Notes: generated by a model not told the origin, from the letters alone. Counted from the first letter of the stretch, positions 7,766-50,710 are shown. The stretch is 64,000 bases of DNA from Bispira polyomma (GCA_965649765.1 OZ287752.1:19964001-20028000), one strand, 5' to 3'. Translations and numbers: made by a program.

Positions 7766-7773
7766 CTTACCAA
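6595..7773 (-). pseudogene. Penelope RT/GIY-YIG ORF remnant with an in-frame TGA at 6838-6840
   Basis: Two ORF-track segments in the same frame, separated by a single stop within the GIY-YIG domain (QTKR*LMDRF). N-terminal RT motifs are missing. Confidence 0.9.
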
Positions 7774-17173: not shown

Positions 17174-17206
17174 AGATGACGACGACCACGACTGAGTCCA
17201 CCACAG
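17174..17206 (+). CDS. Microexon 1, 33 nt, phase 1-1: (E)MTTTTTESTT
   Basis: cctgtgtttttcag|AGATGACGACGACCACGACTGAGTCCACCACAG|gtattt. Confidence 0.8.
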
Positions 17207-17407
17207 GTATTTAAGTGTTAATGGAGCTTTGATTTTGTAGCTATTTCAATTAAAGCTTACCCCTTCTACTCAGTAATGTCTGTGTATTTAACTCTCTGAG
17301 GTGTGTTGTCTGTAGCTTTTTAGTCTGGCTATATATTTGTGGCTTGAGTCTATCTATGTGTAACTGTGCTAATACTAATACTATTCTCCTATTTTATTAA
17401 TCGTTCC

Positions 17408-19562: not shown

Positions 19563-20075
19563 TCACTTCACATACTTTCCAATACTGCTGGTATTTTATT
19601 CCATTTTACTTCATTTTGGCTAATTTTACACAAATAGCCACTTTTCAATAGATTTTCTTGTTTTTAGCGTTGTGTAAACATGGATAGGTGATATATCCAG
19701 AAGTTTAAAAATATGTTTCAATGTGTATAAAATAACCAGGCTTAGCATAGAAGTTTCATTTATATTTGTATATAGCAAATTTCTTGATGAATATTTGTTA
19801 GGAAAACAATAAGAAACATCAATTGTACAATACAACATCATCCTATTTAAATCTCTGTTTTTTTAACTCAATTTCACCTTTTCAAATTTGTCAAATATCC
19901 CTTCTTTTTAATGATTTTTTTTTAAATGTTTCATCACATTTACCAAGGATTTTGGATAACAGAAGTTCTACTGTATTTAGTCAAAGTATGAGTAGAGCTT
20001 TACAAAGCTATATGCTATGTCAAATGTAAATTAAGTTAGATCTTTTTTGATCCTCAATGCCTGATGTGTCACTTA

Positions 20076-20758
20076 GCCTGCGCTTCCTTTCAGCATGTTT
20101 TTATCGGCCGATGTCGGCCGACGTCGGCCGATTTTTTCCCTCATTATACAATATTACCAAGTGCTTCCTTTCAGCAGATTTGCATCAGATCAGATTTGTT
20201 TTGCCAACAGTTTTTATATGTCAGGGAGCGAAAAAATCGGGAGGACTGTCCGATTTTGAGGCAAAAGTGGACAAAATAAACTGTCATAGGTATAGTTTTC
20301 ATCCAATAAATACTCAATATTCGTCGGATGTTAAAGTTGAAAATGGCATGAGAAAGCTTATTTTATTGTGATTACTGTGCTTTTTTCGAAACGGCTCAGA
20401 TATTTAAGCTTATAGAAGGGTACCCTATTTAACTTTCCCTTCTACAGTGAATAATATGTCACAGTGACGTTATAATGACGTCAGGTTTGTAGCTACGTCA
20501 CAGCTTATACATGAAGAAGTAAAAATGGATGCCCTTTTTTAACTGTATATATCTCAGTCGTTTCTAAACGATTTTTTGTGGAAAAAGAAGCACATTAACC
20601 ACAATAAAATAGGCTTTCTCCTGCCATTTTCACCTTCTACATCCCACAGATTTTAAGTATATATCTGATGAAAGGAAGCGCTACATCGGCCGACGTTGGA
20701 TCGGATCGGGCACCTTCAAATCGGCCGACGTCGGAATGTGCTGAAAGGAAGCGTAGAC
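20076..20758. mobile_element. MITE with ~20-bp TIRs (TA or TWA target)
   Basis: Left tta-gcctgcgcttcctttcagca, right tgctgaaaggaagcgtagac-taa. Internal tcggccgacgtcgg palindromes near both ends. Confidence 0.8.
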
Positions 20759-20944
20759 TAATTTTCTCCTTCAGGCTGTAAGAAAAATTACCTATTAGTA
20801 CTAATACCCCTGATGCTAACAAATCTATTACTTTCTGGCTAAAACATTGTGAGTTTTTCTTTCACACTGATTTTTATATTACAAAACTTTTGCTGAAAGT
20901 CGTCACCATTCATAGTGTATATGTTACAGTCAATCTGTGAAACC

Positions 20945-21053
20945 AGTCATTATGCGTAATGACTAAAACTTACTCATTTCATGTAATGCCTGAAACCACC
21001 AGTCATTACGCGTAATGACTAAAATTTCCAGTCATTACGCGTAATGACTGGAA
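20945..21053. repeat. Cluster of three 20-28-bp palindromes (agtcattacgcgtaatgact)
   Basis: Copies at 20945-20964 (one mismatch), 21001-21020 (perfect) and 21026-21053 (perfect 28-bp ttccagtcattacgcgtaatgactggaa). Confidence 0.85.
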
Positions 21054-23541
21054 TTATGGTAGACGGTTATTATACAGGAAGCACACATTGATGGTTGTTT
21101 ATTGACCAAGTTACTTTAAACTGGTATGTTTTGCAAAGTTTTGTATATAAAAACGTTGATTATGAGAAATTTGTGATCCTTTGTTCATGATATTTGTTCT
21201 TGTATTTGCAAAAATAATCTTTCAGAGATATTTGAAAAGTTAGGGATGGGCGTTTGCGCGAGCATAGGCGATATCGATATGTCACATGATTTGTTTTTAT
21301 AATGTCAGCTGTGTTTGGGTCACTAACTTGTGTCCTGGATGTTTATCTAATTGTTACAGAATATATGCCTGGATTTTTAAACATATGTGTCTCAGGGTTG
21401 AGAAAAACCCGGGTTTTATGAGTATTGCCTAGCCTTGCCCAAGATTATGTCTAAGTAGGTGATTAGGCACTTTGTGAGGTAATTTTTTTGTCTGGATTTA
21501 GATCTCAGGAAATACTGGCCACAGGAAGTTATATGATAGAAATACTCATTGAAAGTCCTAGTTGTACCTCATGATCTTTGACTTTTAGTTATGACCTTGA
21601 CCATTAAAATGTTCTCCAGATGATAATGATGAACCTTTTTAAATCAAATCTTAAGTGACTAGGAGAAATATCTCTACTTAAGCAGGATTTCCACTTAACA
21701 GGCTAGCTTTTAAAGGAATATTATCCGCTGTTTTGGGACTGTAACTTTTCTCCACAAATTAGGAATTGAATTAGCAGTGTTCTACCTAATAGGGTTTGAC
21801 TGTATATTGTAAAGTACTTGTCGCAGCAAGTTTGGTACAAATGCAATGCCACCTGTCATGTCATGATCTGATCTCATTCTGACAATTGAACTCGGAAGTA
21901 TGACCTTCTCACAGCAACTTTACCTTCAACAAACATTTGTTCAATGTTGTGGTCTGGCCTCATTTTCACCTTTTACCTTCAAAGATCTTGTCTACATTTG
22001 TTTCAATAACTGCTCTTCACAGGAAATTTACATATGTTCGGGGTGTAGAGGTGCAATATCATGCTTTTATCTTATTTCATTTTGTTAATGACCTTGACCT
22101 AACAACACTTGTTCCGTCTATATCTTATTAGCTATCATATTGGGTATAACCGAACAAAAATAGTTTTTATGTGAAACCGTCATAATATTTATTCATTGTG
22201 TAATTTGTATGTGTAATTATAAGACATTCTGTCTTTGTTGCTGTAGAATTTCTGGGTTAGTGTTCATGAAAAGGGAAACCTGTTGTTTTATCCGGTGCTC
22301 AGACTACAGGCTGTAGGGAGTGCAAAGAGAAAGGTTTAATTTCAATGTTTTTCTTCAGACTACTGCACTGATGTATTTGTCAACTGCATGTAGAATTGAT
22401 TAAAAGAAACTTTTTTGACAAATTATGGACATGTAAACTGCTATTTCAAGTCTCATAATATAGCTCTCCAGCAAATTATTATTTTTACAGACATGTTATA
22501 GGACATTATGAATCCATCAATCTCACATTTGTGCAGACCTTTTATAGGGCATTATATCAATCCATCAATCTGCCAGGTTTGAGTGCATAATGTATACTTA
22601 ATATATCAGATAATAACTAGCTACTACACATGTGCTTTAGATTGAGTGACCCATAAAAGTCACACAATCAGACTTCAATATCTCCTCCTAGGAGATTATG
22701 TTTCTTGTCCATGTTCGTCATTTTGTTTCTTTTTACAAGGAATAGTGTACGTTTCCATATCGTCAATTGGCGATGGCGATCAGCTGACGTTCGACAAGCA
22801 ATTGGCAATTTTTATGTGTCCATAGAGTTATTTAACAAAAATGGATCCTATATTTAAACCTAAATATTTTAGCCATTTCTCAACCCATTTTGATGCAATA
22901 AAAAGCACAATCAACCCAATAAAATAAGCTTTCTAACCATATTTTTGCAAAATTTGTAATTAATAAAGAATCGGCAATCAGCAAATTTTGCAGTCAGGAT
23001 CCGGATCTAGTGATTTTCTTTACTTTTTTATGGCCTTGGAAATGGTATGCACTCAGTGCCCTTAGTCTAGTTCATGTATGAAAATATATTACTTGAGTAA
23101 AGGACACCACATTCCCCTGATAAGTGTTACAATGTTTATGTATCAGTGACAGATTATAAGGACTAGATTCTAGATTCCTTAGGGTTTTGAGCCATTGAGG
23201 TTTTGTCCATAAACCTATAATGAAAAATCCTTTCAAGTAGAACTTGGTTTAGTCAATTTCCCTTGGATGTTTAGAAAATGCTGTAGTCCTACTAGGCCCT
23301 TTCTGTTTTAACATCAACCCTGTTAAGTAGAAATCCAGTGTTTCACCTGAATTCTTGAGGTTCTACTTAAAGGGGCTGGACTATCTATATGGGCTGCTAG
23401 TGTTCCCTTTTAAGGTTCTTAAAAACAAACAATTGTATATACTAATTTTTGTTGATGTACTATATTCTCTCCGTGGACAAATCTTTGATTTTATATTTGA
23501 ATAGAAGGACTAGTTCAAACTGTCCACTGTTTTTATTACAG

Positions 23542-23574
23542 AAACAACTGTCACTTCAGGGGTTACAAATACAG
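23542..23574 (+). CDS. Microexon 2, 33 nt, phase 1-1: (E)TTVTSGVTNT
   Basis: gtttttattacag|AAACAACTGTCACTTCAGGGGTTACAAATACAG|gtaaca. Confidence 0.8.
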
Positions 23575-24779
23575 GTAACAAATACTCTTAACACATATAT
23601 ACACAAATATGATATAATCATTTTCCAAAGAGATTTGTTTTTCTTCCCTCTTTCAGACTGGCAATATGTATATAGTGTACTGTGTCCCTCAAGATACAGA
23701 CTCTTGTCTCCAATGTACATGTATATCCTTGTGTGTATTAATACTGTATAAGTGGGAATTTTAGCTGGAAGAAAATTTCACTTAAATTTACAATTCTTCA
23801 AGAAATTTGCTGTATATAACTGCATATTCACTACAGTTGCAGATTAAAATACAAATTTTATTTTTACTTGGAATTAATTTTTACTACTTCAGGTCACCTA
23901 AACTTTAAAATAAGTAAAATTACTTCAGAGTGAAACTTTCCACTTGTGCAGCATGTTTAGGTGTATAGAAATATATATGATATATATAGTCAAGTTGTTT
24001 GCATGCATATTCTTAGGAAGACTTCTCACTATTCTAGACTTTTGCATGGCCTCTTAGCATAATATGAATAGTCATTTATTATGACACTATAAGGAATATT
24101 GACATGAAAATTAATGAATAAGCCCAGACAAACTATGAATATATGGTAAGTTGACCACGATTAAAAGGTGTTTCTACGCTTCAAACAGTGGTAATTTGCC
24201 TTATATCCAAGGTTTGGAATGGGTTATTACAATTGTAACATGACATACAGTCAAACCCCTTTACGTAGAACTCTGATAAGTGGAATTACATGCTAAGTAG
24301 AAGTTATTGAAAGGTTTTATGTTAAGTATAACAATTTTTTATGGTCCCTTCAGATACGACTATATTAAGGGTTCCACTATATTAAAATTAATACCTAAAT
24401 CTTTAAAAAAAAAAAGCAATTAAATGGTGTTACTGGAGCGTAAGAAAAAGTATGGAATAAACAGTCTCGAAAATTCAGATGTAGTCCTAGAATTTACCAT
24501 GTTCTTGAGCCTGAACCAGAATCGGCAACACAAGCATATCAGGTTAGAATCTGTAATATACAGTAGGATGGTTCAAATGCATTAAGTTTGTACTATATGT
24601 ACCTCTACTTAAGTAGGAGATACACTTAACAGGGTAGATTTTAAAAGAAAAGGCAATTGTGTTACATAAGTAATGCTCTTTAAGGGAGTTTGACAATACT
24701 AACTTTTCTCTACTGGATAATTATTCATAGGGTTCCCGTCCCCCAACCCCCCCGACCCTACCCCCCTCCTTCAGGACAT

Positions 24780-25390
24780 TTTATTTTGGTGGTATGGTGT
24801 CCCATTTGGGTTTCCGCTCAATTAAAGAAAAAGTATTGCGGCTATCTTTACCAAATGTAATACATGAGTTTATCATGGGTTATCATAATAGTTTGCTTGG
24901 GGCTGATTTTGGAGCCATTCCGAAAAAAACAAAAGGGCCTCCATTGATTTCAATGTAAATACTGTTTTTGCTCATTTAAAGGAAACATATTGCAGCTATC
25001 TTCACCAAATTTAAATCATGTTTTTTTCAAGGGAAAATGTTACTTGCGATTGATTTTGGGCCTGTTCTGAAAAACGAAATGTCTGCCGTTGACCTTAACA
25101 TGGAAACTGTTTCCGCTCATTTAAAGGAAAAGTATTGCAGCAATGTTTATCAAAGTCAATACATGGGTTTATTAAGGGTACAGCTCCATTGAGATTAATT
25201 TTGGGACTTGCCGAAAACAAAATGGCCGCTGTTGACATTATTGTGAAAGTGGTTTCCACCCATTTAAAGAAAACATATTAGAGCTATCGCCCCAAATTTA
25301 ATGCATGAGTATAGCTTGGGATCGATTATATTTCGTTTTTTTTTACATTGTCTAAAAGGGGGAAAGGCAAGCTAGGGGTTGGGGACATTT
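24780..25390 (+). repeat. Family B-related array element (about 4 monomers)
   Basis: Recurring tttccgctcatttaaaggaaaagtattgcagctatcttcaccaaattt...gattttggg...aaaatggccgc. Confidence 0.6.
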
Positions 25391-26079
25391 ACACACTGAT
25401 AATGTGCACATTTTTCCCATAGAAACGTATGCTAATTCTGATAGTCTGCATCAAAGTATGACCCGTTTCTGTATGGCCCCCTCTGAGTTGGCGCCATCTA
25501 GTTTGTTTTACAATGGTATTGTTTTCACCCGGGTCGTCCAAATAACGGAGCGGGTGAGCGATGACAGTCAAAGTTTGTTCAGACTACTTATCTCAGACAC
25601 CATGAGGTAGAATAAGTTCAAATATTGCACTAATATTCACTGGGGGATGTAGGTGTACAACATCATGGTGTGACCTTTGACCTTCAAGCAATCGGACCTT
25701 GACTTTGAACGTCTTGTCTTGAAAATCTTATTTTGCCTATTTGTCAAACACCTTGAGGCGGAGTCAGCTCATATTTGCTACAAATTTATGAGTTTAGGTA
25801 TGCAAGGTCATTGTCTGACCATATTTTTACATCTGACCTTGAAATAATGACCCCCAGCTCAAATAATCTTGTTTGGATTATATATTGGAAACTAATTTGA
25901 ATTCTGATTCTTTTATTCATCAGGGCATGTTTGTACATGTGCAAACTCATGAGCTGATCTTATTTTGCCCTTTGATCGCGGAATAATTACCTTGACCTGA
26001 TTTTTTTTCAGGACCAGTATTTCTTAGAGAGTAATTCCTAATCCCACATGTAGAATGAATTATGTAAACTTATTATTAA

Positions 26080-27265
26080 GTGTCCCGTAAGAGCGCTCGT
26101 TTGTATATAGGAGAAAAATTTACGTGTTTTTGGTCAGGCGACTTCTCTGATTGGTTGAAATTGGGCGGATTCTTTTCAAATTTGGCATATGTGTGCAGTA
26201 GCCCTGGGAAAATTTTTTCAATATGGCGTCATCATATTTCGACCAATCAGAGAAGTCACATGACCAAAAACACGTTTTTTAAAGGCGTGTGCTTGTCCGG
26301 AGGATAACTTACAATGCACTTTACCTATTCTCATGAAATTTGGCAAGTAGGTTTCTTATATAGATGTCTGGAAGTAGATAACTTTGGTAAGTCATCCGAT
26401 ACAAAATAGCCAATTTATTAACGATTAATTTAACGTTAAGAGTTTTCGAAACAAAGAAAATGAAAAATCCTTAACATCTCGGAAACGGTGCGAGATAGAG
26501 TGATTCCGGCTAAATTTTGGGCCCAGAAGGTATACGCAGTCATCTGCAACTTTTTAAAAATTTTGAAAAATTCAAAAATGCGTTTTCGGCTGAATTTTGG
26601 GCCCGCAGGGTATACGCAGTAATCTGGAACTTTTCCAAAATTTTTTATAAAATTCAATTTTTTTTATTGCAATTTTTTGGGTGATAACATTTTTTTAAAA
26701 AAATATTTTTTTTGGTCATAAAATTTTTTTTTTTTTTTTATTTTTTTTAGGATCATAAATTTTTTTTTTTTGGCAATACTTTTTGGAGTCATAAAATAAT
26801 TTTTTTTTGCAATATTTTTTGGGGTCATAAAATATATTTTTTTCGCAATATTTTTTGGGGTCAGAAAATTCTTTTGCAATATTTTTTGGGTTCATAAAAC
26901 TTTTTTTTGGCAATATTTTTTGGAGTCATAAAATTCTTTTTTTGGGGTCATAAAATTTTTTTATTGCAATATTTTTGTGGGAGTCATAAAATTTTTTTTT
27001 TGCAATATTTTTTGGGGTCATAAAATATTTTTTTTGCAATCCTTTTTGGACTCATACAATTTTTTTTTTTAATTTTTTTGGGTCATAAAATTTTTTTTTT
27101 GGCCATATTTTTTGGCGTCATGAAATATTTTTTTTTTTGCAATACTTTTTGGGGTCATATTTTTTCTTTAAATTTTTTTTGGGTAATAACATTTTTTTTT
27201 AAAAAAAAATCGCTCTCACCATTTTTGGCAGCCAACTTGAATTTCTGCGTTAAACACAAAAATGT
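26080..27265 (+). mobile_element. Array-bearing element with an internal T-rich ~31-33-bp minisatellite (26660-27200)
   Basis: Repeated ttttggggtcataaaa(t)nGCAATA units. Flanks share ctcggaaacggtgcgagatagag and ttggc.gcca.cttgaatttctgcg with 19050-19340. Confidence 0.6.
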
Positions 27266-28353
27266 GTTTATCAACCTATTCATATTTTATCTTCAACACT
27301 TGCTAACAATAATATTACAACAATAACACACAAAACATCCTTATTGCAGTCTTTCTCATTTAGTGTTTTAGCTTTGATCTATTATTTCAGAACCATCATT
27401 CATTTGAAACTCATTGATTTATTTTTCAGTTAAATTTATTTATATCTACAAAAGATAAGCTAGTTTGTCTGCCCTGATTTGTTCAGTTTTCTTGAACTAG
27501 ATATATAACCTTTGACTTTTTCCACTTGCATATTCTCAGGTTATTTTTTAATTGAGAAAAAAATCATATTTATTTTAATGGTTTGCATATAGATATATAT
27601 TTAATCAAAGATATTGTTAATCAATTTTATTTCTTGGAAAAGAAATTTTATGATTTCAGTAGCTTTTCTAAGAATAAATTCATAGTACCCAGGTAACTGT
27701 ATGAACTCATTGTTTCATTGTTAGTTTCAGTCTAGCATAAGCTATAATTAACTCAATACATTCAACCACCAAAAACCCTTACCACATTTAAATTTACAAT
27801 TTTTTTGACATATTAATAAAATAATGGTCTGCTCTATGATGAAATCCTATGATAAAATTAAAACAAAAATAATCAAGCCTGATCAGGCGATTTAATTTTT
27901 TTCCATGCGTAACACCACACATTCGGATTAAAAGACCTGTATATGCCAACTGAGTCATTGGCTTAGGTTAACTAACATTATAGTAACATAATATTAACAA
28001 TCTCAATAATGATCTAAAAGAAATTTAAAGACGCCACAGAGTATTAAATAATCTTCAGTGTCATTTATAGTCAATTTCTCTATTTTTTCCACAAAAAAAA
28101 TGGGTAAGCAGAAGTTATAGACTTGAATGTCTTGTTAAACATGGTTGCGCAAATCTGGGAAAATATGTGTTAAGCCGAGTACTAATCTGTTAATTCATAC
28201 AAGACAAAGAATCGGTTATTTTCAGTATCGTAGCACCCTACGATACACTTATCAGATATATATACATGTACATAATAGTTGTACTAGTAAATTTGCGAGT
28301 GGATATTATTACATCCAAATTCTAATAGAAGATTAAATTTAATTTTTCCCAAG

Positions 28354-28380
28354 CATCAATGGCGACTACAGAAGCTCCAG
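28354..28380 (+). CDS. Microexon 3, 27 nt, phase 1-1: (A)SMATTEAP
   Basis: aatttttcccaag|CATCAATGGCGACTACAGAAGCTCCAG|gtaaat. Confidence 0.75.
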
Positions 28381-28527
28381 GTAAATATTGTGTACTTTTT
28401 GTCACAGTTTTATCTGGATTCACACATTAACAATAACACTTATACCACATGATAGATAATGTAAATGTTATGAGGTATGATATGTGGTGATCACATCTCT
28501 GATATAAGTTTAAATGTATAATAAATA

Positions 28528-28690
28528 CAGTTTAACCCCTGCAGGTCAAGGTTCCAGGAGAAATACCTCTACTTGAGTAGGATTTTAACGTAACAAGATA
28601 CACTGTAAAAGAAAGGTCTTTGTGGGACTACATTTTTTCTCCACATAAAAGAGAAGTTGACTTAAGATAGTTCTAATTCAAGGAGTTTAA
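28528..28690. mobile_element. Small TA-flanked (Tc1/mariner/pogo-type) MITE whose right TIR seeds the adjacent minisatellite
   Basis: Left end ta-cagtttaacccctg. Internal cctctacttgagtagga..tttgtgggact..ttctccaca is shared with copies ending agggtttgactg-ta (~21660-21804). Other relatives start ta-cagtcaaacccct (24246) and lie at ~24600-24695. Confidence 0.6.
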
Positions 28691-29575
28691 CTCTAATTCA
28701 AGGAGTTTAACTCTAATTCAAGGAGTTTAACTTTAATTCAAGGAGTTTAACTCTAATTCAAGGAGTTTAACTTTAATTCAAGGAGTTTAACTCTAATTCA
28801 AGGAGTTTAACTCTAATTCAAGGAGTTTAACTTTAATTCAAGGAGTTTAACTCTAATTCAAGGAGTTTAACTTTAATTCAAGGAGTTTAACTCTAATTCA
28901 AGGAGTTTAACTCTAATTCAAGGAGTTTAACTCTAATTCAAGGAGTTTAACTTTAATTCAAGGAGTTTAACTCTAATTCAAGGAGTTTAACTTTAATTCA
29001 AGGAGTTTAACTCTAATTCAAGGAGTTTAACTCTAATTCAAGGAGTTTAACTTTAATTCAAGGAGTTTAACTCTAATTCAAGGAGTTTAACTCTAATTCA
29101 AGGAGTTTAACTTTAATTCAAGGAGTTTAACTCTAATTCAAGGAGTTTAACTGTAATTCAAGGAGTTTAACTCTAATTCAAGGAGTTTAACTTTAATTCA
29201 AGGAGTTTAACTCTAATTCAAGGAGTTTAACTTTAATTCAAGGAGTTTAACTCTAATTCAAGGAGTTTAACTTTAATTCAAGGAGTTTAACTCTAATTCA
29301 AGGAGTTTAACTGTAATTCAAGGAGTTTAACTCTAATTCAAGGAGTTTAACTTTAATTCAAGGAGTTTAACTCTAATTCAAGGAGTTTAACTTTAATTCA
29401 AGGAGTTTAACTCTAATTCAAGGAGTTTAACTCTAATTCAAGGAGTTTAACTCTAATTCAAGGAGTTTAACTTTAATTCAAGGAGTTTAACTTTAATTCA
29501 AGGAGTTTAACTTTAATTCAAGGAGTTTAACTCTAATTCAAGGAGTTTAACTCTAATTCAAGGAGTTTAACTTTA
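28671..29575. repeat. 20-bp minisatellite, about 45 head-to-tail units (ctBtaattcaaggagtttaa)
   Basis: Units are identical apart from one C/T/G position. No spacers. Confidence 0.98.
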
Positions 29576-29633
29576 CATGAATTCTGTAATGAGTGCTTCT
29601 CAGTTGTTAACCAAACATATTATTTCATTACAG

Positions 29634-29669
29634 CCTACACATCAACTATTGCTGGTATTGCTGATACAG
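29634..29669 (+). CDS. Microexon 4, 36 nt, phase 1-1: (A)YTSTIAGIADT
   Basis: tatttcattacag|CCTACACATCAACTATTGCTGGTATTGCTGATACAG|gtaacg. Confidence 0.78.
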
Positions 29670-31210
29670 GTAACGTCATTCTATGTTTAATGTCACTTTT
29701 GTTTCTTACAGGTATTCACTCTTCACTGTGTATCTTAAATACTGAAATTGCATGCTCAGTATATCACTCAGAGTGTGAGAAAATCTTGTACATTTTCAGT
29801 TTAGAAGCTAAATGTTCAAAAGTATCGCCCATATGTCCCTACATAATGCTATAACATATTCAGAAATTAAAAAAAAATTGTCATGACAAATTGTTTTTAG
29901 AGACTCACAAGTGAGCTTTTATCAGAATCAGATTTTGTGAAGAGTGTGGTTATATAAAGAAAAGACCCCCCAAAAAGAAGAAAATAAGACAGATACCTGT
30001 GCGAGCTGACTTTATAAATAATGACTTCTATAAAAAGCATGTGTTAAGAATACTCTGTGTAATATCTGAACACCTTGCGAAAGCTGAAGTTTAATAGAAG
30101 GTTCATAAAATCGAAGAGACAATTTATATCAAACAACAGGAAAATATAAATCTTTCAAAGTAGTTATGAGTTCATAAAATTGAATATTTGAATAGTAGAA
30201 GTTCAGCTATTAGAAGTTATACTAGTATTTCAAGCATACCTTACAGTATATCAGAATGAACAAACTGATTTAGTCAAATGTTTAGCCCCTGCTGTTAATC
30301 AGGCCTCTTCTGTTCATTATCATCTAGTCTTTAAATACATGTACCGATGGTAGGACTGCTATATAGGTGTTAATTAAAACTGGGTTGGCCTGAGTAAGCA
30401 GGTGACTATAACTAGTTTTAGTATAGCATAAGTTATAATTATTGTAAGATAGTCAACCTAGAATGGTCCTTACCACATTTAAATTTGCTTGTTTTGGCAT
30501 TTCAATAATATAGTGCTCTGATCTAGTATGGCTTAGGGTCATATAGAAAAGCTGTCTAGCATTGATAAGTCTTTTGAGCTTTTCTCTTTGTCACATAAAA
30601 ACTGGGGGCAATTATGTAATTCTGTACCATCTTATCAAAAACATCCTACAATAAACATATGTATGTAAACCTCTTAACATCATAATTAACACACGGTGGG
30701 ACTAGTTCTTAACTTGCTTGCCTAATACACTGCAGTTGGAATTATAGTAGACGGCATTCGCACAAATATTAAGCAAGTTATCAAATACTAAATGACTTAA
30801 TAATAAGAGTAGAGTAATAAATAATATTAAAGTAGGATTGAATATTTGGATATTAGAAGTTTAGATAGTAGAGGTTCTACTGAGAGTAATAAATGAGTTG
30901 TAATAACTTATATAAATGAAAGTGTGATGATGTCAAGCAATTATAGAAACTAAGGAAGAAATTTATCTATTAAAGAAGTGCATGTCACTATAATAATTAA
31001 TATATAAAATATTTTATAGAGATAACTAAAAAAGCTTAAATAGTCCACGTAGGATTTTTTTTTTAAATACTCAATCTTTATGTGTATATTTGCTCCATTC
31101 TTAAACACTCTTTCTAATATCTTTAAATATTCACAACTGTTCAACATGTATAACATATTTTATGTAAAAGAGAAAATTATTTTTATCTGGTTTTTTAATC
31201 TATTTAGTAG

Positions 31211-31237
31211 ATTCCATGACAACTGATAGTGTGTCAG
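31211..31237 (+). CDS. Microexon 5, 27 nt (30 with the NAGNAG acceptor), phase 1-1: (D)SMTTDSVS
   Basis: tatttagtag|ATTCCATGACAACTGATAGTGTGTCAG|gtaaat. Confidence 0.75.
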
Positions 31238-31539
31238 GTAAATAAAAACCCTTCATACAATGCACAGCTTTCTGCCAGAACACTAAATACTATTAATCAA
31301 TGTACTTCAATAATAAATGTGTCCCTTCCAGTTGTCTGCGTCAAGAGCAGTGCATTTGAACACTGACTTGATTAAACCTGTGTTTTTTTGCTCAGTGTTA
31401 AATGTCCTGATCTTCATGCCATATATAATTGCTATTTATTCATTTCTAGCTTTTAATGTTAACTATTTGGGCATCATTATGTTAAATCCTGGGTGCATCA
31501 GCCTATGGCACTTTCAATATAATAACACAATGGTCAAAG

Positions 31540-31648
31540 AAATCACCCCTATTCTAACTACCTCACAAACTTTCCCATATGAGAATGGGATTTGAACCCA
31601 CATTGGTGAGAAGCCAGTAATTATAGAGCCACTAGGCCACCGCAGGCG
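31540..31648 (-). mobile_element. SINE head fragment
   Basis: gggatttgaaccca...ccactaggccacc is the reverse complement of a tRNA-like A/B-box head. Confidence 0.45.
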
Positions 31649-31979
31649 CTCCTAATCACCAGTCACGAATCAGGCAGTTTTTGAATCATTATTTTACACA
31701 CAAATAAAGTGGTTAACAATTAGTTCTATGCTGTCTTCATCTCTTCTCATATTTTACTCAATCACTTAAATATGCCTGCCAAGTTTAAAGAATTAAAGAC
31801 AAAAACTGTTAATGGGTACATTTACATGTACTTGTAGAAATCTTATAGTGACGTAACAAAATGCTACTTGGTATAAACTGCGGTATGCGTTGCAATTATT
31901 GTTTTGAACGATAAAAGTTCTTGTGATTTGCAAACTTAAGATGATAATCCCATTTGTTTAAACTACATGTTTTTTACAG

Positions 31980-32012
31980 ACTTTACATCCACCACTAGTT
32001 TAACGGTTACAG
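31980..32012 (+). CDS. Microexon 6, 33 nt, phase 1-1: (D)FTSTTSLTVT
   Basis: gttttttacag|ACTTTACATCCACCACTAGTTTAACGGTTACAG|gtaaat. Confidence 0.8.
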
Positions 32013-32493
32013 GTAAATAAATACATATGTTTCAACACCTATCTCATGATTTTCAGTGCATGGTTCTGGTGTATAAGTTACACACAACAAATAATATTAT
32101 TTTTTAAAATCACATTTTTACTACCTCTTTTTTTGTAAAAGAAAAAGTAAAAATAAGTGTATAGAGTTAAAGTAAATACTACATGCAGGCTAATTTGTTA
32201 CTCCCAACAATTGCTAATGCAATCGAATGTGTTTGATTTTGTGCTTAAGCATTTTAAAAACTGGTAGTTCCATAGAAGAAGCATAGTATATGATCTAGTA
32301 GTTGCACAGTATATGTTCATGATCGCTAAAATGCATAGTTTGAACTATGAATTTAACTGAAGTCTATATATTTTATATGCAAGTTGTTTTAATTTTTTTT
32401 AGAATATCAAATATCAAGTGGACTTATTAAAGAAATTGCATGTAATATTTTTATCTTTGACAGAAGTTCTTTGTTTAAACCTGTGTTTTTCAG

Positions 32494-32526
32494 ACTCTGA
32501 TACTATGAGTCAAACTCTATCAACAG
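32494..32526 (+). CDS. Microexon 7, 33 nt, phase 1-1: (D)SDTMSQTLST
   Basis: cctgtgtttttcag|ACTCTGATACTATGAGTCAAACTCTATCAACAG|gtcact (weak donor). Confidence 0.72.
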
Positions 32527-32876
32527 GTCACTCAGAGAATGTCTACATATCAATTGGTATTTACATGTATAATCAAACCTTAATGAGAGACTATCTGTAT
32601 TAATTGAACAACCACCTGACCTTAAAATCATTTGAAAATATTCTCAGGCCTTTACTAATTGGACAGGTGAATCATTCATATAAACGTCACCACAAATGAG
32701 GCCTAAATATTAATAATCACAACATTTTAATGAAAAATTATTTAGATGTATTAAACGCCTCTTCAACTGATATTGTATAAAGCAATGTTTTGTTCTAAAA
32801 TAAGAAAGTACAGAAAATGCTAAACCTTATATATTATAATCTCTGTTAGAATACTGAACACAAAATGTTGTTTCAG

Positions 32877-32909
32877 AAGCCAACACTGCAGTAGAAACCT
32901 TGTCTACAG
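32877..32909 (+). CDS. Microexon 8, 33 nt, phase 1-1: (E)ANTAVETLST
   Basis: tgttgtttcag|AAGCCAACACTGCAGTAGAAACCTTGTCTACAG|gtaaac. Confidence 0.8.
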
Positions 32910-33039
32910 GTAAACTTTACCTACATTCATCAGCAGGGGAAACAGAATTTCAGTCTCTGATACCAAAACCAATAAACGTATTGGATCTGGTGCAACACCT
33001 ACCCTATTGAAAGATTTACCAACCAATATAAGATACTAG

Positions 33040-33241
33040 GAGATCCTCTTTAGATTTAGAAGTGACCTTAAAACCCACCTTTTCACCCTCACTTTCAAGT
33101 ACCCTCCATTAAGTCATCTTTCTCCTCCATGTTACCCACTGATCATCAATTTGCATTGGAAACAGACCACGATTTTAACAACTTTGTCAATGAAGTTGCC
33201 TAGCATCAATTAAGCGTGTTAAAAATCTATCATATCATATC
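33040..33241 (+). mobile_element. 3' tail relic of an L2/CR1-group LINE
   Basis: tttagaagtgaccttaaaacccaccttttc encodes FRSDLKTHLF. Ends aagcgtgttaaaaatc followed by (tatca)n. Confidence 0.5.
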
Positions 33242-33519
33242 AGGTGTGGTTTAAATCTTTGATAAGACTTATTTTTTGTTATTTATTGAACTGGTTGAGT
33301 TTGACTTTAAGTTATAAAAATACTATTATACCTAGTTTCAACATAAAAGATAAACCTAAAATTTCAGATATTTGACAACAGATGATATTTTTATATATTT
33401 TATACAACACAGATAATATGGACTTATAGTATGTGAGTTATAAAATGACTTAAATATTGGTAGCTTTTAATAGTCATGTAATATCATGAAATCCTTGATT
33501 GTTGAAACTTTTCTTTTAG

Positions 33520-33552
33520 AATCTGAAATAACAACTACCACTCAATCAACAG
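33520..33552 (+). CDS. Microexon 9, 33 nt, phase 1-1: (E)SEITTTTQST
   Basis: cttttcttttag|AATCTGAAATAACAACTACCACTCAATCAACAG|gtaact. Confidence 0.8.
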
Positions 33553-35552: not shown

Positions 35553-35603
35553 ATGATGGCAATTCTAACGATGGTCAAGATGGTAATATGAATAATGATA
35601 ATG
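35553..35603 (+). CDS. Exon 10, 51 nt, phase 1-1: (D)DGNSNDGQDGNMNNDN
   Basis: acatttcag|ATGATGGC...GATAATG|gtgagt. Canonical donor and length a multiple of 3. Confidence 0.78.
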
Positions 35604-39599: not shown

Positions 39600-40835
39600 T
39601 AAGCTTGTCCTGCTTTACAAATGATATTTTTTACTTTAACTATGTTCTATGTGTAATGTAAATGTTTCAGGTTACAAGCTCTTCTAATTTGTCAACAAAT
39701 TCTGCTAATATGAGTTAATTGTCAAGCACAATAACATCTTATATCACAAAACATATCTGACACTGCTACCATGGTATACAACATATGCCAGCAGGGTTTA
39801 AAGGGTAGTATATGTATTATCCTTTATGTTTTCATAGATTTTCTTGCTAATTGGTTGGCGATATCGGGGGACAGACAGAACAAACCGGGACAAAACTAAC
39901 CAGACCTAAAACAAAATGTATCAAGATTTTAAAGCCAGCTAAAAAAGACATGTGCAATGACATTTTAAAAGCTCTTTTAGTAATATTTTAATAATATGTT
40001 AAAAGTACATTTAAAAGGAATTTCAATTGTAATAGCCCTTTTAACAGAAGAAACACTGCTCCCCCAAGAGTACATTTGAAAGAGAAAAAAGTGGTGGGAA
40101 GTTTATGTGAACATTTTTGTAATGACTTTAATTGCAATGGAGATTTTAGTAAAAAAAAAGCTGTCCTGTAAAGATGATTTGCAATGTTCACACATCATTT
40201 GATTGCAATGAGCATCCTCACACTAAAACCTCAGTACAAAATGGGCTTGATTTTAAAGGGACTACCAATGGGTATGACTTTAAGATGTAAAATACAAAAT
40301 ATTTTCTACTGAAAATTTAAATCTTGGTACATGACTTAAATACTAAATATTTTCTCTAAAAATAGTAGTTACATTAAATTTTAGTGAAAAAATTTAAATC
40401 TTGTTACATTTTGGCCCAGTTAATTTTGTCTCAGTTCGTTTTCTCCCAGTTTATTTTGTCCTAACACCCAGCGATATCAGGGTCAATTTTTCTGGGCATT
40501 AATAAAAAGGCTGAACATTTATTTGGATTATTAATGGCCAGTTCAAAATAAAAGAAAAGGCATTTTAGTATGAGGCAGCAGGAAATTACAAATTTTTAAA
40601 GATTCAAAGTATGTTCATTAAATCCAATATTTGGATAACAAAAATACGAAAAAAAGTGGTTGCACTATTTATGTATGATTTTCCATCTTGTGTACTGTTT
40701 CAATATCTGTCTAGGTAGCCATTCAATCACCAGAATAAAATTGATGTGTTGTGTTAAAATGCCTTTATCTACAAAAAGCCAGATGGTCAGTTCTGTGCCA
40801 CTAGGAATTTGTGCTCCACGTGAGTCATTAAAAAT

Positions 40836-41060: not shown

Positions 41061-41234
41061 ATTGTGACTGTGACTGTGACTGTACCTGTGACTGTTGTAC
41101 CTATGCCTCTGGACTCTTCTATGGCCCTGGTATCAGCGTGCCACTCGGCCAAATGTTTACTCTGACTATTCTATGCCTAGTCTGGACTGGTGTGCTGTGT
41201 GCTACGTGGCAATGTGTCAAGAGATGTAGTAAGA
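41061..41234 (+). CDS. Exon 11, 174 nt, phase 1-1: Cys cluster plus TM1 (DCDCDCDCTCDCCTYASGLFYGPGISVPLGQMFTLTILCLVWTGVLCATWQCVKRCSK)
   Basis: ttatctgtag| ... |gtaagt. Open over 58 codons, GC-richer than the introns, with a hydrophobic stretch followed by basic residues. Confidence 0.85.
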
Positions 41235-41937
41235 GTAAGTATATTAGCAATTAAAGCTAAAATTCTCATCACCGATAAACCATTACAATATCTGGTCAAT
41301 TAGCATCAATAGTCACATTATTTATCCATACACACTATATTAATCAAATTATAATGTAGAAATAAAGTTCAAGTGTGGGTACTTTATTGGTGAATCAAGG
41401 ACTGACTTACGGCAGAATAATGAATGAGGGCCGGTAGAAAGACTGAAAAGCAAAAAATAAGATATTTTCCAACTTACTGTGAACTATTTTTGTTGCTACT
41501 GACGGAACTATTTATCCGTGATCTATTCTCCCAGATAAAGTACGGTTACGAATTGCGCACTGACGGCTTTTGTCATTTGACGTTTTGACACACATCACCA
41601 TATTTATGACATTCGCTTCATCTAGATATCAAAACCAGTTCATATCCATGTCAGTATTTCACTGCAATGCATTTGTATGTCATAGGTACATAACAGTAAA
41701 GTTATTTGTGTTTTGAAACATAATTATATGCTTGGAAGTTTTGAATTCCTGGGAGACAATAGTAAATTAAAGGGAAATTACTCAGTTTGTTTAATATGTG
41801 TTATAAATTACTCCACCGGTTTTAAGATTTCTTAGTTATTTAACTTATATATATATAAATTATATTATTATTCTTGCATAAAGAAACACAGTATTGAGTA
41901 TATTATTAACCTTTAATGTATTCCATTGACTTTCCAG

Positions 41938-42081
41938 AAAACAGGATGTTTCAGCTAAAGGTCCAGTCAGTGATACATTGCATAGTAATTACATTCTCGT
42001 TTTCCTGCTTAATCGCCATTGGTGTATGCTATGGGAGAAATCAGAATCAACACTGTGACTGTTGTAACTGTGACTGTAACT
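41938..42081 (+). CDS. Exon 12, 144 nt, phase 1-1: TM2 plus second Cys cluster (KNRMFQLKVQSVIHCIVITFSFSCLIAIGVCYGRNQNQHCDCCNCDCN)
   Basis: actttccag| ... |gtaagc. Lies within ORF-track ORF 41916-42098. Confidence 0.85.
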
Positions 42082-42759
42082 GTAAGCTCAATCCTTGAAA
42101 TAATTTATATTACTTCTAAATGTATATTTTTACCTACTTTATATTATGGGGTTCAGAGAGTAGATATTCACCTGTGTGACTGTTTTGTGTCCATATTTTC
42201 CAAGTTTTCTCAGATTCAGCCTAATTTTCAACTCAAAATCTTTGGTCCCCACTTTTGACACAATGAAGAGAAATACACAGAACACACTCATGGTTATAAA
42301 TTTAAACTATGAGAGTTTTTACACAAATTGTAACTATGTAGACCATATAACCAACAAATTATTTCAATGTCAGTCCAGACCTAACTTTCCAACATAGGTG
42401 GCTTCTTATAAAATTCTATCACATTGTACAATGATAACCAGCCCCGCATCAATTAGTCTTTATCAGAACACCTACATCCTATCAGACACACAAATAACTC
42501 TACCCTGCCGAGCCTAACGGAAGAGTAACACAAGGAGATTATAATTTAATGAGTTTTATTTTGCTGGCCGAACTGGTTAAACTGTATTGACCTGTTTCCA
42601 TAAAGAATTATTAGAATGAAATGAGAAGTGCTTTGGCAAACTACATGTATATCTTAAAAACAAATTATCTTCCCTTATTGATGGATGGGCTTGATATGTA
42701 TGGATGATGTGCACATTTGTATGAAAACCTTACTTAATAGAGTTTTACCGGCTTTCTAG

Positions 42760-42867
42760 GTGAAGATAAGACACCGGCGTACATAGTGATAGTACCAACT
42801 CTCATTTTAACCGTCTACATCATTGGATTGATTCTGGTGATCCTATGTGTGCCGAAATACATCAAAG
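42760..42867 (+). CDS. Exon 13, 108 nt, phase 1-1: TM3 (CEDKTPAYIVIVPTLILTVYIIGLILVILCVPKYIK)
   Basis: gctttctag| ... AAAG|gttggt. The T|GT junction completes a Cys of the cluster. Strongly hydrophobic stretch of more than 20 aa. Confidence 0.85.
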
Positions 42868-45400
42868 GTTGGTAACAATTTCTATATCCTTCCCTTATAT
42901 GAATAAAAGTGTACATCATACTAAGCATTCCATGAATTTCATCACAAACGTTGGTATTCTATTATCATTATATAGCGCCCTATTGACATAGCATTGTCTA
43001 AGGTGTTCATTCTCGAAAATGATGGTCTTACGACATAGCCCAGGTTGTTATCAGTAGGAGATGGCTTGTGTTCACATCTAGTCCAATTATGTCATCCCAC
43101 ACACCAATTAAGCTAGTGGTATTATCATGCATCGAACCGTAGACCTTTGGATCACCAGACCACCTCTCTCATCTGTGAATCAAATTGGGGACCTCCTGAT
43201 CACCAGACCAACTCCCTGATCACTGTGGGAGACCATGATCTGCATTCCAACCTGTTGAATACACTTTCTATTATGCAGCCAATCAATTAGTTTTGGTGTG
43301 ATGTCCTTACCTCCACCAGGCTGTTAGACAGAAAAAGCAGGACAGTTCGGCATCTTGCTTCACTGTTGTCACCACAGTCTCTCGGGACCATCTTCTATGA
43401 GTAATTGTTTGTAGTTTTGAATTAATTAATATAAGACAAGAGAGTTCTTATTATCTTATTTCAACTTGTATTATATATATTGTAGTACTGTTCACAATGA
43501 CTACTTCTTTAGAACTGGGGAGTTTTCCCTACATATTTTGTAACCAGGTCTCAGGACCCTTTGACCCCATACACATGTTATTATCTATTAATCTGCCAAG
43601 GTGTTGACAGCTTTACCCAAACAATCTGATTACCTACTAGCCTTTCATTAGGCTCTTCTGAACCCTTTAACAGTAATCATACCAGAACTTGTAACAGCAA
43701 CCTTGAATGTTTCTATTTTATATATATTGTAATTTTTTGGGTATTATCGCTCATGGAAGATCTATTGACATCAGCATTGCTTTTTACATCTAAATATTAT
43801 GTATATGTAACATGACCTTTCACCTTTTGCTGCACTCTTGGATTTCTACATCTTCAGTGCTTCTCTCTATATTTTGGGGGTTTCTGTTTAATTAAGCAGT
43901 GGTCAAGTACTTATCTTGACTAGTTACACTTATATATGATGTATCCATGTCTTTTGGTAAAAAATAAAAACAGAAAATTGACAAATGGTAATAATTGGTG
44001 TGACAAGTTAATTAAGCTTCACCCACAGGAGCACAGCTAGTGTAGAAGCTAGTACACCTAGACGTACCAATTTCATGACAGAAAAAAAAATAATAAAAAA
44101 CAAAAAATAAATTTAATGACCGAATGACCCCCTCTCCCACAAACGAATCGAATTTATGTTAGCACATAAAAAAACATAAGCTTTGGATTAATTGGTGAGT
44201 ACCAAATGAAAAATCCTAGCTACTCCCATGACACAGACAAAGCTTTGAAATTAAATTTTTTCAGTGTGTGATAGCTTATTATATCTGTGCATTAACTAGC
44301 TATACTGCTCTGTAATCATGAGTAATCAAGTATAATGTATTTAATGAATATAAGTACAAACAATAGAACCTCTATTGTTTGAACAATAGAAGGTTAAAAA
44401 AAAAGGAGGAATTTCTGTCTAAAACAACAGAAAGACAGATGTTTGGGGGGGGGGGGGTGTTTGGGGGAGGGGGGCGGTGGAAACTAGTTCATAAAATTAA
44501 ATATTTGGATAACAGAAGTTTGGATAATACAGGTTCACTGTTTTAGTTTAACTGATTTGCTATATGTGGAAATCTATCAAATATTGGGTTTGGTTCAGGC
44601 TTTGTGGCAGATTATTTTATTAGTCACAGACAAGGTGCTATATTCACAAAAGCACTGACTTAAGTTAAATTATGTGTGTTTTATTTCTACTAGATTTGAG
44701 ACTAAATCCAGACTTAGGCCTGTTGCGAACATGGTGTCTGTAGTAAAACTGATTAACATAACTACCACACTTTCACAGAACCTAGATTTGTTATTGTATT
44801 GTTAATAATGGTTATGTAATAACAATTTGTAGTAAATGTGTGTATCAACATAATATGGTCCATATAATAATTATGTAGATGTTTAAATTTGATAATACAT
44901 TCTTGGTGAAATGATTCATTCAGTTATCCCACAGAATGTCTATTTTTTGTGAAAAATTTTTTTGTAGTCATACCATTCATTATCAGTCCGTTCATAATTA
45001 TTCATAATGTATTAATTATAAAATATTCGTTATGTTCATAGTATATTTCTTTTATGAATAATTTGTTAATGTTTCGTAAATATTCATAATGAACAAATGG
45101 TCATTAATTCATAAATAATGTTATGAATTTCCTTATGAATGTTGTTATAAATATATTAGAAATATTATTCATAGGAATTTTATTTTGACAGGGTGCTTAG
45201 ACTTTTTTAGTTTGTGCTTATATCAGTGACTGGAGTTAATTATTTTAATGTTTTTGTACAGTACATTAATGTCATTTGCTCTGTACATAAGAATTAACTT
45301 GTGCATTTAGTTATTTTAATGTTCGAATAAAATAATAATAATAATAGAATAAATACACTTACTTTTGCATTTTTTTTTTTATATTTGTGTATGTACAAAG

Positions 45401-50619: not shown

Positions 50620-50710
50620 TGAAGTGAAACATCATGACCTACCAAAAGGAGTGACGGTGACAGATCCCATGACCCCTCGCAAACTACCACCTATAGGTCG
50701 AAAGTATTAA
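50620..50710 (+). CDS. Last coding exon: (S)EVKHHDLPKGVTVTDPMTPRKLPPIGRKY*
   Basis: gacgtttcag|T GAA GTG ... TAT TAA. The phase-2 start fits exon 14. GC-richer island followed by AT-rich putative 3' UTR, with aataaa at 51101. Confidence 0.7.

What the first reader, a model, noticed from the sequence alone, without database searches (positions are those of the whole stretch)
41061..42867. Unrecognised three-TM protein with two juxtamembrane Cys-x-Cys clusters on the same face
Seen: the spliced frame gives DCDCDCDCTCDCC (7 Cys), TM1, KRCSKKNR, TM2, CDCCNCDCNC (6 Cys), TM3, PKYIK. The positive-inside rule predicts N-out/C-in, placing both acidic Cys clusters outside, next to the mucin stalk. CxC/CC spacing resembles metallothionein-type metal-binding motifs. 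Alternatively, the two clusters could pair as a disulfide ladder or oligomerisation zipper. I do not recognise this combination (mucin stalk, D/N patch, paired Cys clusters, 3 TM) as a named family.
Basis: partly seen in the sequence, partly recalled or inferred. Interest (0 to 1): 0.8.

Follow-up and report, generated by a model that had tools for sequence, protein, structure and literature searches.

The report
Orphan three-pass cysteine-cluster membrane protein
Three small exons in this invertebrate (probably annelid) genome very likely encode a real three-pass membrane protein with no detectable relatives beyond one neighbouring duplicate, and its cysteine-aspartate clusters are mostly young, copy-specific repeat expansions around a short conserved core rather than a conserved metal-binding motif.

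Summary
Exons A (41061-41234), B (41938-42081) and C (42760-42867) have canonical AG/GT sites and are all in phase 1. They read DCDCDCDCTCDCC, TM1, a basic loop, TM2, HCDCCNCDCNC, TM3, PKYIK.

A tandem paralogue 81 kb downstream keeps all 12 splice dinucleotides. Only the homologous frame is open there, both indels are in-frame (24 and 15 nt), and all three hydrophobic segments survive about 23% nucleotide divergence. In simulation, the chance of staying stop-free with all three TM segments kept is about 0.004-0.007. I therefore take it as a real coding gene, though no RNA data exist.

The Cys clusters are not conserved in size. They are 7 and 6 Cys here against 3 (CDCC) and 2 (NCNC) in the paralogue. 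All cluster Cys use TGT, and the (TGTGAC) run occurs nowhere else in the 1-Gb genome.

Both clusters lie on the same face. The charge distribution in both copies puts that face outside.

No relatives turned up in Pfam, PDB, 1.84 billion protein representatives, the Atlas or metagenome contigs.

The function is inferred, not shown. My best guess is a membrane-anchored mucin-like protein whose exoplasmic clusters disulfide-pair. Both gained four Cys, keeping an n+1/n count. Metal binding remains a weaker rival. Both gene ends are unresolved.

The parts
41061..41234 (+). Exon A (174 nt, phase 1-1). It encodes Cys-Asp cluster 1, an 18-aa linker, TM1 and the start of the basic loop.
   Evidence: AG acceptor and GTAAGT donor. 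The paralogue exon at C5:20086415-20086564 has 65% aa identity, the same splice sites and only this frame open.
41063..41098 (+). Cluster 1, CDCDCDCTCDCC, coded by a (TGTGAC)n hexamer repeat. The paralogue keeps only CDCC.
   Evidence: TRF reports period 6 with 5.5 copies. The repeat is unique in the genome. A 24-nt in-frame indel separates it from the paralogue. All Cys codons are TGT.
41153..41209 (+). TM1 core, MFTLTILCLVWTGVLCATW.
   Evidence: Kyte-Doolittle 19-residue mean is 1.82 here and 2.29 in the paralogue.
41938..42081 (+). Exon B (144 nt, phase 1-1). It encodes the rest of the basic loop (K|NRMFQLKVQS), TM2 and cluster 2.
   Evidence: AG acceptor and GTAAGC donor. The paralogue exon at C5:20087888-20088016 has 57% identity, and CLIAIGVCYG is invariant.
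41970..42035 (+). TM2, VIHCIVITFSFSCLIAIGVCYG.
   Evidence: Kyte-Doolittle 19-residue mean is 2.39 here and 2.85 in the paralogue.
42051..42081 (+). Cluster 2, HCDCCNCDCN plus a split Cys completed by 42760-42761. The paralogue has only PANCN plus the split Cys.
   Evidence: the indel is 15 nt and in-frame.
42760..42867 (+). Exon C (108 nt, phase 1-1). It encodes (C)EDKTP, TM3 (42777-42851) and the PKYIK tail.
   Evidence: AG acceptor and GTTGGT donor. The paralogue exon at C5:20089227-20089334 has 69% identity and the same length. Kyte-Doolittle means are 2.86 and 2.99.
45262..45269 (+). Candidate start of the terminal exon. It completes the codon G|TA (Val), then His, then a stop; AATAAA lies 66 and 88 nt further on. 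Unverified.
   Evidence: A conserved 62-nt block begins here. The paralogue also reads V-H-stop, with a synonymous CAT/CAC change and a TAA/TGA stop swap.
42868..42907 (+). Alternative 3' end. If the weak GTTGGT donor is not used, the frame reads on to KGW-stop (TAA at 42874-42876), with AATAAA at 42902. The 49 nt after exon C are 92% identical to the paralogue.
   Evidence: In the paralogue the read-through gives a different tail and the signal reads AATGAAA.
35553..35603 (+). D/N-rich exon candidate (DGNSNDGQDGNMNNDN), phase 1-1. Its final G would complete Asp with the first two bases of exon A.
   Evidence: It has a cag acceptor and GTGAGT donor. No counterpart was found in the paralogous region, so the link to exon A is inferred only.
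17174..33552 (+). Span holding S/T-rich phase 1-1 microexon candidates. Five are 33 nt, at 17174, 23542, 31980, 32494 and 33520. Others lie at 28354-28380 and 31208-31237.
   Evidence: There are 12 candidates in this strand and phase against 0-2 in each of five control strand/phase combinations. 31208-31237 is identical in the paralogue despite diverged flanks, but 23542-23574 is 34 nt there, which breaks the frame.

Best explanation
Exons A-C are the membrane-anchoring part of a real, fast-evolving, lineage-restricted gene. The gene exists as a tandem pair inside a segmental duplication of about 30 kb.

The product crosses the membrane three times. By inference, the N-terminus is outside, and probably carries a Thr-rich, O-glycosylated stalk built from phase-1 microexons. 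A 19-residue strongly basic loop is inside, a 16-21-residue acidic loop is outside, and a tail of about 7 residues is inside. The protein therefore has almost no cytoplasmic part and acts as an anchor, not a signalling receptor.

The two Cys-Asp/Asn clusters sit on the same face, which is exoplasmic by the positive-inside rule. They grew from short conserved seeds (CDCC before TM1, NCNC after TM2) by in-frame expansion of a TGT-GAC/AAC hexamer in this copy.

Most likely mechanism (inferred): on the oxidising outer face the two clusters disulfide-bond to each other. This would staple the base of the stalk to the TM2-TM3 loop and leave one unpaired Cys for dimerisation or cross-linking. Both copies keep an n+1/n count, 7/6 here and 3/2 in the paralogue, and both clusters gained four Cys.

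Shown: the reading frames, the paralogue conservation, the repeat origin of the clusters and the lack of relatives. Inferred: expression, topology, the link to the stalk, and disulfide pairing.

The confidence figure covers the core claim only (a real three-TM orphan gene whose clusters are repeat expansions on one face). I put the disulfide-pairing mechanism itself at about 0.3.
For: Coding status:
- The paralogue keeps 12 of 12 splice dinucleotides.
- Only the homologous frame is open in each of its three exons.
- Both exon indels are in-frame, 24 and 15 nt.
- The chance of no stop after 86 random substitutions is 0.02.
- The chance of staying stop-free with all three 19-residue hydropathy windows at 1.6 or above is 0.004-0.007, run in both directions.
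- The paralogue's hydropathy exceeded 20,000 of 20,000 simulations in the forward test.
- Second codon positions changed least: 35/20/31 differences by position.
- dN/dS is 0.57.

Not a transposable element: the genome holds only two copies, in tandem.

Repeat origin of the clusters: TRF finds period 6. Cys codons are 12 TGT to 0 TGC inside the clusters against 4 to 4 outside, p = 0.014. The repeat is unique in the genome.

Same face and orientation: two hydrophobic spans lie between the clusters. Loop 1 carries +6 here and +5 in the paralogue, and the cluster regions are acidic in both copies.

Stalk: phase 1-1 S/T-rich microexons are enriched 12 against 0-2. The whole unit, window 22420-51134, was duplicated together.

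Orphan status: no family or relative was found.
Against: - No RNA run exists for this organism. The three runs laid are genomic contigs. No splice junction, start or end is therefore confirmed.
- Exons are no more conserved at the nucleotide level than their flanking introns: 73-81% against 78-92%. dN (0.235) is close to the intron divergence, so constraint on the residues is weak.
- 8 of 13 cluster cysteines are absent from the only relative, so large clusters are not required for function.
- The n+1/n parity and the +4/+4 gain rest on two copies only.
- The 18-residue linker before TM1 is semi-hydrophobic. If linker plus TM1 formed a hairpin, the clusters would lie on opposite faces.
- No signal peptide or first exon was found.
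- The D/N exon and three microexons lie in a stretch (32281-39015) with no paralogous counterpart, and one microexon is frame-broken in the paralogue.
Confidence: 0.7

Rival explanations
1. The enlarged clusters are tolerated low-complexity slippage products with no function of their own. Only the short CDCC/NCNC seeds and the three helices matter.
For: - Cluster sizes are 7 and 6 Cys here against 3 and 2 in the paralogue.
- The clusters are perfect hexamer repeats with uniform TGT codons.
- dN/dS of 0.57, with dN close to intron divergence, shows weak constraint.
Against: - (TGTGAC)n is not a microsatellite of this genome; the 21-mer occurs only here.
- Two separate exons expanded in the same copy by the same number of cysteines.
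- Thirteen unpaired exoplasmic cysteines would normally be costly for folding in the ER.
Confidence: 0.3
2. One reading: the acidic CxC/CC clusters form a metallothionein-like Cu/Zn/Cd-binding site at the outer membrane surface, for metal capture or buffering. One variant is a Ctr-like three-TM, N-out metal uptake protein.
For: - CxC and CC spacing with flanking Asp/Asn.
- The three-TM, N-out/C-in layout with a metal-ligand-rich ectodomain resembles the topology of Ctr1/SLC31 (established knowledge).
- Both clusters lie on one face.
Against: - There is no Pfam hit to metallothionein or Ctr families for any exon, even at E up to 10.
- TM2 lacks MxxxM and TM3 lacks GxxxG, read directly from the sequence.
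- Thiolate clusters are normally cytosolic, and on the oxidising face disulfides are expected.
- Most ligand cysteines are missing in the paralogue.
Confidence: 0.12
3. The topology is reversed, so the clusters face the cytosol and are S-palmitoylated. This is what has been reported for the Cys-rich module of yeast CYSTM proteins.
For: Cysteine runs near the membrane are classic acylation sites. PMC10840359 (title and abstract found, paper not read further) reports palmitoylation of CYSTM proteins in yeast.
Against: - Loop 1 carries +5 or +6 and the cluster regions are acidic in both copies. The positive-inside rule therefore puts the clusters outside.
- The upstream Thr-rich microexons suggest an extracellular N-terminus.
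- Cluster 1 is 18 residues away from the TM1 core.
Confidence: 0.08
4. It is not a gene. The exons are chance open frames in duplicated non-coding DNA that contains a hexamer repeat.
For: - No RNA evidence exists.
- No protein in any database matches, not even a self-match.
- Exons are no better conserved than neighbouring intron sequence, and most non-repeat DNA of the duplicated unit still aligns.
Against: - The joint chance of staying stop-free and keeping three TM-grade hydrophobic segments is 0.004-0.007. This figure does not yet count the 12 of 12 kept splice dinucleotides or the two in-frame indels.
- The other two frames of every paralogue exon contain stops.
- All three exons share phase 1, as does the upstream microexon array.
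Confidence: 0.12

Closest known systems
CYSTM (cysteine-rich transmembrane module) proteins, Pfam PF12734; PMC2804304, PMC10840359
   Same: Both are small eukaryotic membrane proteins with dense cysteine runs at or near a hydrophobic segment. Members of CYSTM are linked to stress and metal tolerance.
   Different: CYSTM proteins are tail-anchored, with a single C-terminal Cys-rich module facing or inside the inner leaflet. Here there are three separate helices, the clusters lie outside the helices on the predicted outer face, and Pfam gives no match.
Ctr1/SLC31 copper transporters (Pfam PF04145)
   Same: Both have three TM helices, an N-out/C-in topology, a glycosylated ectodomain rich in metal-ligand residues, a short TM2-TM3 outer loop and a short cytosolic tail (established knowledge).
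   Different: There is no sequence match. TM2 has no MxxxM and TM3 has no GxxxG. The candidate ligand residues are Cys-Asp repeats that vary between the two copies.
Metallothioneins
   Same: Both have CxC and CC spacing and a very high Cys content. The three exons here hold 21 Cys in about 142 residues.
   Different: Metallothioneins are soluble and cytosolic with conserved Cys positions. Here the clusters are membrane-tethered, predicted to be exoplasmic and of variable length, and no profile matches.
Schistosome micro-exon genes (MEGs); PMC5825161
   Same: In both, a candidate array of very short symmetric exons (27-33 nt, all phase 1-1) encodes a variable extracellular region.
   Different: MEGs encode secreted products in flatworms, and RNA proves their microexons. 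Here the array is unverified, it ends in three ordinary TM exons, and no homology exists.
Membrane-tethered mucins (general class)
   Same: Both have a Thr/Ser-rich stalk outside the cell and a membrane anchor, with cysteines available for cross-linking.
   Different: Known tethered mucins are single-pass with SEA or EGF-type modules and a signalling tail. This protein has three passes and no recognisable domain.

Membership tests
CYSTM (PF12734) | Profile match to the CYSTM module. | tested here: not met
   hmmscan of each exon peptide against Pfam-A at E up to 10 gave no CYSTM hit.
CYSTM (PF12734) | Tail-anchored architecture: one C-terminal Cys-rich hydrophobic module and no other TM. | tested here: not met
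   There are three hydrophobic segments with Kyte-Doolittle means of 1.8-2.9, and the clusters lie outside them.
Ctr copper transporter (PF04145) | Profile match, plus MxxxM in TM2 and GxxxG in TM3. | tested here: not met
   No Pfam hit. TM2 reads VIHCIVITFSFSCLIAIGVCYG and TM3 reads AYIVIVPTLILTVYIIGLILVILCV, and neither carries its motif.
Ctr copper transporter (PF04145) | Three TM helices with an N-out/C-in topology. | tested here: inconclusive
   Hydropathy and charge distribution agree in both copies. This is only a prediction made exon by exon; no topology predictor was run on the joined model.
Metallothionein | Small soluble protein with conserved CxC/CxxC positions and a profile match. 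| tested here: not met
   No Pfam hit. The clusters are attached to TM helices, and 8 of 13 cluster Cys are absent in the paralogue.
Micro-exon gene (MEG-like) architecture | Most of the coding sequence is built from symmetric exons of at most 36 nt. | tested here: inconclusive
   Phase 1-1 S/T-rich candidates are enriched 12 against 0-2 in controls, and five are exactly 33 nt. Conservation in the paralogue is mixed. No RNA exists to prove their use.
Micro-exon gene (MEG-like) architecture | Signal peptide exon and a secreted product. | tested here: not met
   No convincing in-phase signal-peptide exon was found. The 3' exons encode three TM helices, so the product is membrane-bound.

The most novel reading that the evidence does not exclude
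This is a previously undescribed family of three-pass membrane-anchored mucin-like proteins with two exoplasmic Cys-Asp clusters that co-expand by in-frame hexanucleotide slippage. Together they would form a length-tunable disulfide zipper or surface metal-binding collar whose size differs between recent gene copies.
Probability: 0.15. Interest if true: 0.6.

Novelty: new variant of a known kind. Interest (0 to 1): 0.35.

Why it matters
If the gene is expressed, it is an example of a young, taxonomically restricted membrane protein. Its most striking motif was made by microsatellite-type expansion inside coding exons, twice in the same gene copy and by the same number of cysteines. That would make it a small natural test of how paired cysteine clusters arise and whether two clusters on one membrane face evolve together. 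It has no known medical or applied significance. Without RNA or orthologues it remains a candidate gene of unknown function.

Tried and rejected
- RNA evidence: the run search returned only three runs from one study, none on record as RNA. When laid, they are genomic contigs identical to the window, with no variants in the exons. This gave no expression or polymorphism information.
- Relatives, all blank:
  - Exhaustive phmmer of exon A against 1.84 billion representatives gave one hit, P0001. It is a repetitive 1119-aa protein matched in 7 short stretches, and I reject it as spurious.
  - The word search with the exon B ORF found nothing.
  - The Atlas feature search found nothing.
  - The metagenome scan with the exon A profile gave 58 pattern matches, none confirmed.
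  - PDB profiles of all three exons gave nothing.
  - Pfam gave only a sub-threshold TM-type match of exon C to DUF3377 at 13 bits, which I reject.
- Downstream exons: 42960-43225 is a dispersed repeat with hundreds of copies, not an exon. 49100-51140 is shared only with the paralogue but has no conserved open frame.
- First exon: scans for in-phase ATG exons with a hydrophobic start gave only unconserved candidates. An in-phase ATG exon read by eye at 40744-40819, with a GTGAGT donor, lies in sequence that does not align to the paralogue, so I did not adopt it.
- tRNA-derived SINE idea for the repeat after exon C: no tRNA-like gene was found.
- No search, topology prediction or structure prediction was therefore run on the spliced model, and single-exon folds were judged uninformative.

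Full report
**What is there**

The window is AT-rich (about 33% GC), intron-rich eukaryotic DNA. It lies at C5:19964001-20028000 of a 1.035-Gb assembly in 75 contigs. Earlier notes of this scan take the genome for a marine annelid. I did not test that.

| Exon | Coordinates | Length | Reads as |
|---|---|---|---|
| A | 41061-41234 | 174 nt | CDCDCDCTCDCC, linker TYASGLFYGPGISVPLGQ, TM1 MFTLTILCLVWTGVLCATW, QCVKRCSK |
| B | 41938-42081 | 144 nt | (K)NRMFQLKVQS, TM2 VIHCIVITFSFSCLIAIGVCYG, RNQNQ, HCDCCNCDCN, last Cys split |
| C | 42760-42867 | 108 nt | (C)EDKTP, TM3 AYIVIVPTLILTVYIIGLILVILCV, PKYIK |

All acceptors are AG. The donors are GTAAGT, GTAAGC and GTTGGT. Every intron is in phase 1.

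Cluster 1 is coded by a TGTGAC hexamer array (TRF period 6, 5.5 copies). Cluster 2 is coded by the same unit alternating with TGTAAC. Such 12-mers occur four times in the window, all inside the two clusters, against 0.3 expected. The 21-mer occurs once in the whole genome. So this is not a common microsatellite that happens to be readable as Cys-Asp.

**Is it a gene?**

No RNA run is available. The three runs that hold the stretch are genomic contigs identical to the window. The test therefore rests on a tandem paralogue 81 kb downstream, with exons at C5:20086415-20086564, 20087888-20088016 and 20089227-20089334. These two are the only copies in the genome.

Evidence from the paralogue:
- All 12 splice dinucleotides are kept.
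- Only the homologous frame is open in each exon.
- The two exon indels are 24 and 15 nt.
- Amino-acid identity is 65%, 57% and 69% for exons A, B and C.

Nucleotide identity in the exons (73-81%) is no higher than in the flanking introns (78-92%). dN/dS is 0.57 with dS 0.41. Sequence conservation alone therefore proves nothing. Most non-repeat DNA of the whole duplicated unit of about 30 kb still aligns (window 22420-51134 against C5:20044277-20092525).

Simulation is more telling:
- 86 random substitutions leave the frames stop-free in only 2% of trials.
- They leave the frames stop-free with all three 19-residue hydropathy maxima at 1.6 or above in 0.4-0.7% of trials, run in both directions.
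- The paralogue is in fact more hydrophobic than the window copy. It exceeded 20,000 of 20,000 forward simulations, while the reverse test gave 0.019.
- Second codon positions changed least, with 35/20/31 differences by position.

Together with the kept splice sites and in-frame indels, I take this as good evidence that both copies have been maintained as coding three-TM units. My confidence in that is about 0.85.

**The clusters**

Only CDCC (cluster 1) and NCNC (cluster 2, including the split codon) are shared. The window copy has 7 and 6 cysteines and the paralogue has 3 and 2.

Inside the clusters all 12 whole-codon cysteines use TGT. Outside the clusters the ratio is 4 TGT to 4 TGC (Fisher p = 0.014). 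The large clusters are therefore recent slippage-type expansions in this copy, not an old conserved motif.

Two things stop me from calling them mere noise:
- The repeat is unique in the genome.
- Two different exons of the same copy each gained four cysteines, keeping cluster 1 one Cys larger than cluster 2 in both copies.

This is an anecdote from two sequences. It is, however, what pairing between the clusters would predict.

**Topology**

Two hydrophobic spans separate the clusters, so they face the same side whatever the orientation. Loop 1 carries +6 here and +5 in the paralogue. The regions around both clusters are acidic, and the tail is short and basic.

There are two caveats. Cluster 1 is 18 residues from the TM1 core, and that linker is semi-hydrophobic, more so in the paralogue. 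A hairpin there would put the clusters on opposite faces, though 33-37 residues is short for two spans. Also, no topology predictor or structure prediction was run on the spliced protein.

**The rest of the gene**

Upstream, S/T-rich AG-to-GT segments in phase 1-1 are strongly enriched on this strand. There are 12, against 0-2 in each of five control strand/phase combinations, and five are exactly 33 nt.

Conservation in the paralogue is mixed:
- 31208-31237 is identical despite diverged flanks.
- 23542-23574 is 34 nt there, which breaks the frame.
- The stretch 32281-39015 has no counterpart in the paralogue. It holds two microexon candidates, the D/N exon at 35553-35603 and a decayed reverse-transcriptase fragment (the fragment is).

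No first exon was identified.

Downstream there are two options:
- A conserved block starts at an AG at 45260-45261 and reads V-H-stop in both copies, with a synonymous change and a stop-codon swap.
- Read-through of the weak GTTGGT donor gives KGW-stop, followed by AATAAA at 42902.

Either way the cytosolic tail is about 7 residues.

**Comparison with known families**

No match was found in:
- Pfam, apart from a rejected 13-bit TM-type match to DUF3377
- PDB profiles
- 1.84 billion protein representatives, where the single hit is a spurious repetitive protein
- the word-indexed protein search
- the Atlas
- metagenome contigs

A 57-residue query would miss relatives below roughly 45% identity. 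At this gene's rate of change, orthologues outside close relatives may simply be undetectable.

The functionally closest known kinds fail their membership tests:
- CYSTM proteins are tail-anchored with a single module. They are reported to be palmitoylated in yeast (PMC2804304, PMC10840359; titles and abstracts seen).
- Ctr1 copper transporters share the three-TM N-out layout, but the MxxxM and GxxxG motifs are absent here.
- Metallothioneins are soluble and cytosolic.
- Schistosome MEGs give secreted products.

**Verdict**

The locus most likely holds a real orphan gene for a three-pass membrane anchor of a mucin-like ectodomain. Its same-face Cys-Asp clusters are young repeat expansions around short conserved seeds.

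| Reading of the clusters | Rough probability |
|---|---|
| Inter-cluster disulfide pairing on the outer face | 0.3 |
| Tolerated low-complexity expansion | 0.3 |
| Metal binding | 0.12 |
| Cytosolic palmitoylation | 0.08 |

A further rival is that the locus is not a gene at all, which I put at about 0.12. These are rough estimates and are not tuned to sum exactly to 1.

Interest is moderate to low until RNA or orthologues are available.

Noticed in passing
window 22420-51134 and G000:C5:20044277-20092525 (loci L003-L010): A unit of about 30 kb is tandemly duplicated about 81 kb downstream at 68-94% identity. It contains the microexon candidates, the three TM exons and a non-coding block of about 2 kb (49104-51134). 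The downstream copy carries an extra stretch of about 27 kb between the counterparts of 40217 and 41009.
   Followed up: partly
window 41376-41643 (intron 1): This is a very high-copy dispersed repeat. Summed contig depth there is 1,000 to 3,000 times that of the flanking unique sequence, and many contigs run on into unlike sequence.
   Followed up: no
window 42960-43225: A dispersed repeat with hundreds of copies genome-wide contains short internal GATCACCAGACC-like repeats. It is present after exon C in both paralogues, so it was inserted before the duplication. ARAGORN finds no tRNA-like gene in it.
   Followed up: partly
window 28672-29572: A tandem array of 45 copies of a 20-nt unit (TCTAATTCAAGGAGTTTAAC) at 96% match lies inside the candidate gene's microexon span.
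   Followed up: no
window 15781-16653 and 46338-47493: A satellite with a 147-nt unit occurs twice in the window, on either side of the candidate gene, and again in long arrays in the paralogous region (C5:20058500-20062800).
   Followed up: no
window 36567-37850 (+) and 6838-7773 (-): These look like decayed retroelement pieces. 37010-37288 gives a weak, sub-threshold RVT_1 match (19 bits). The 311-aa ORF on the minus strand at 6838-7773 looks retroelement-like to me but has no Pfam hit.
   Followed up: partly
window 42868-42916: The 49 nt just after exon C are 92% identical between the paralogues, which is more than any of the exons. This could be a splicing element or a short 3' UTR.
   Followed up: no
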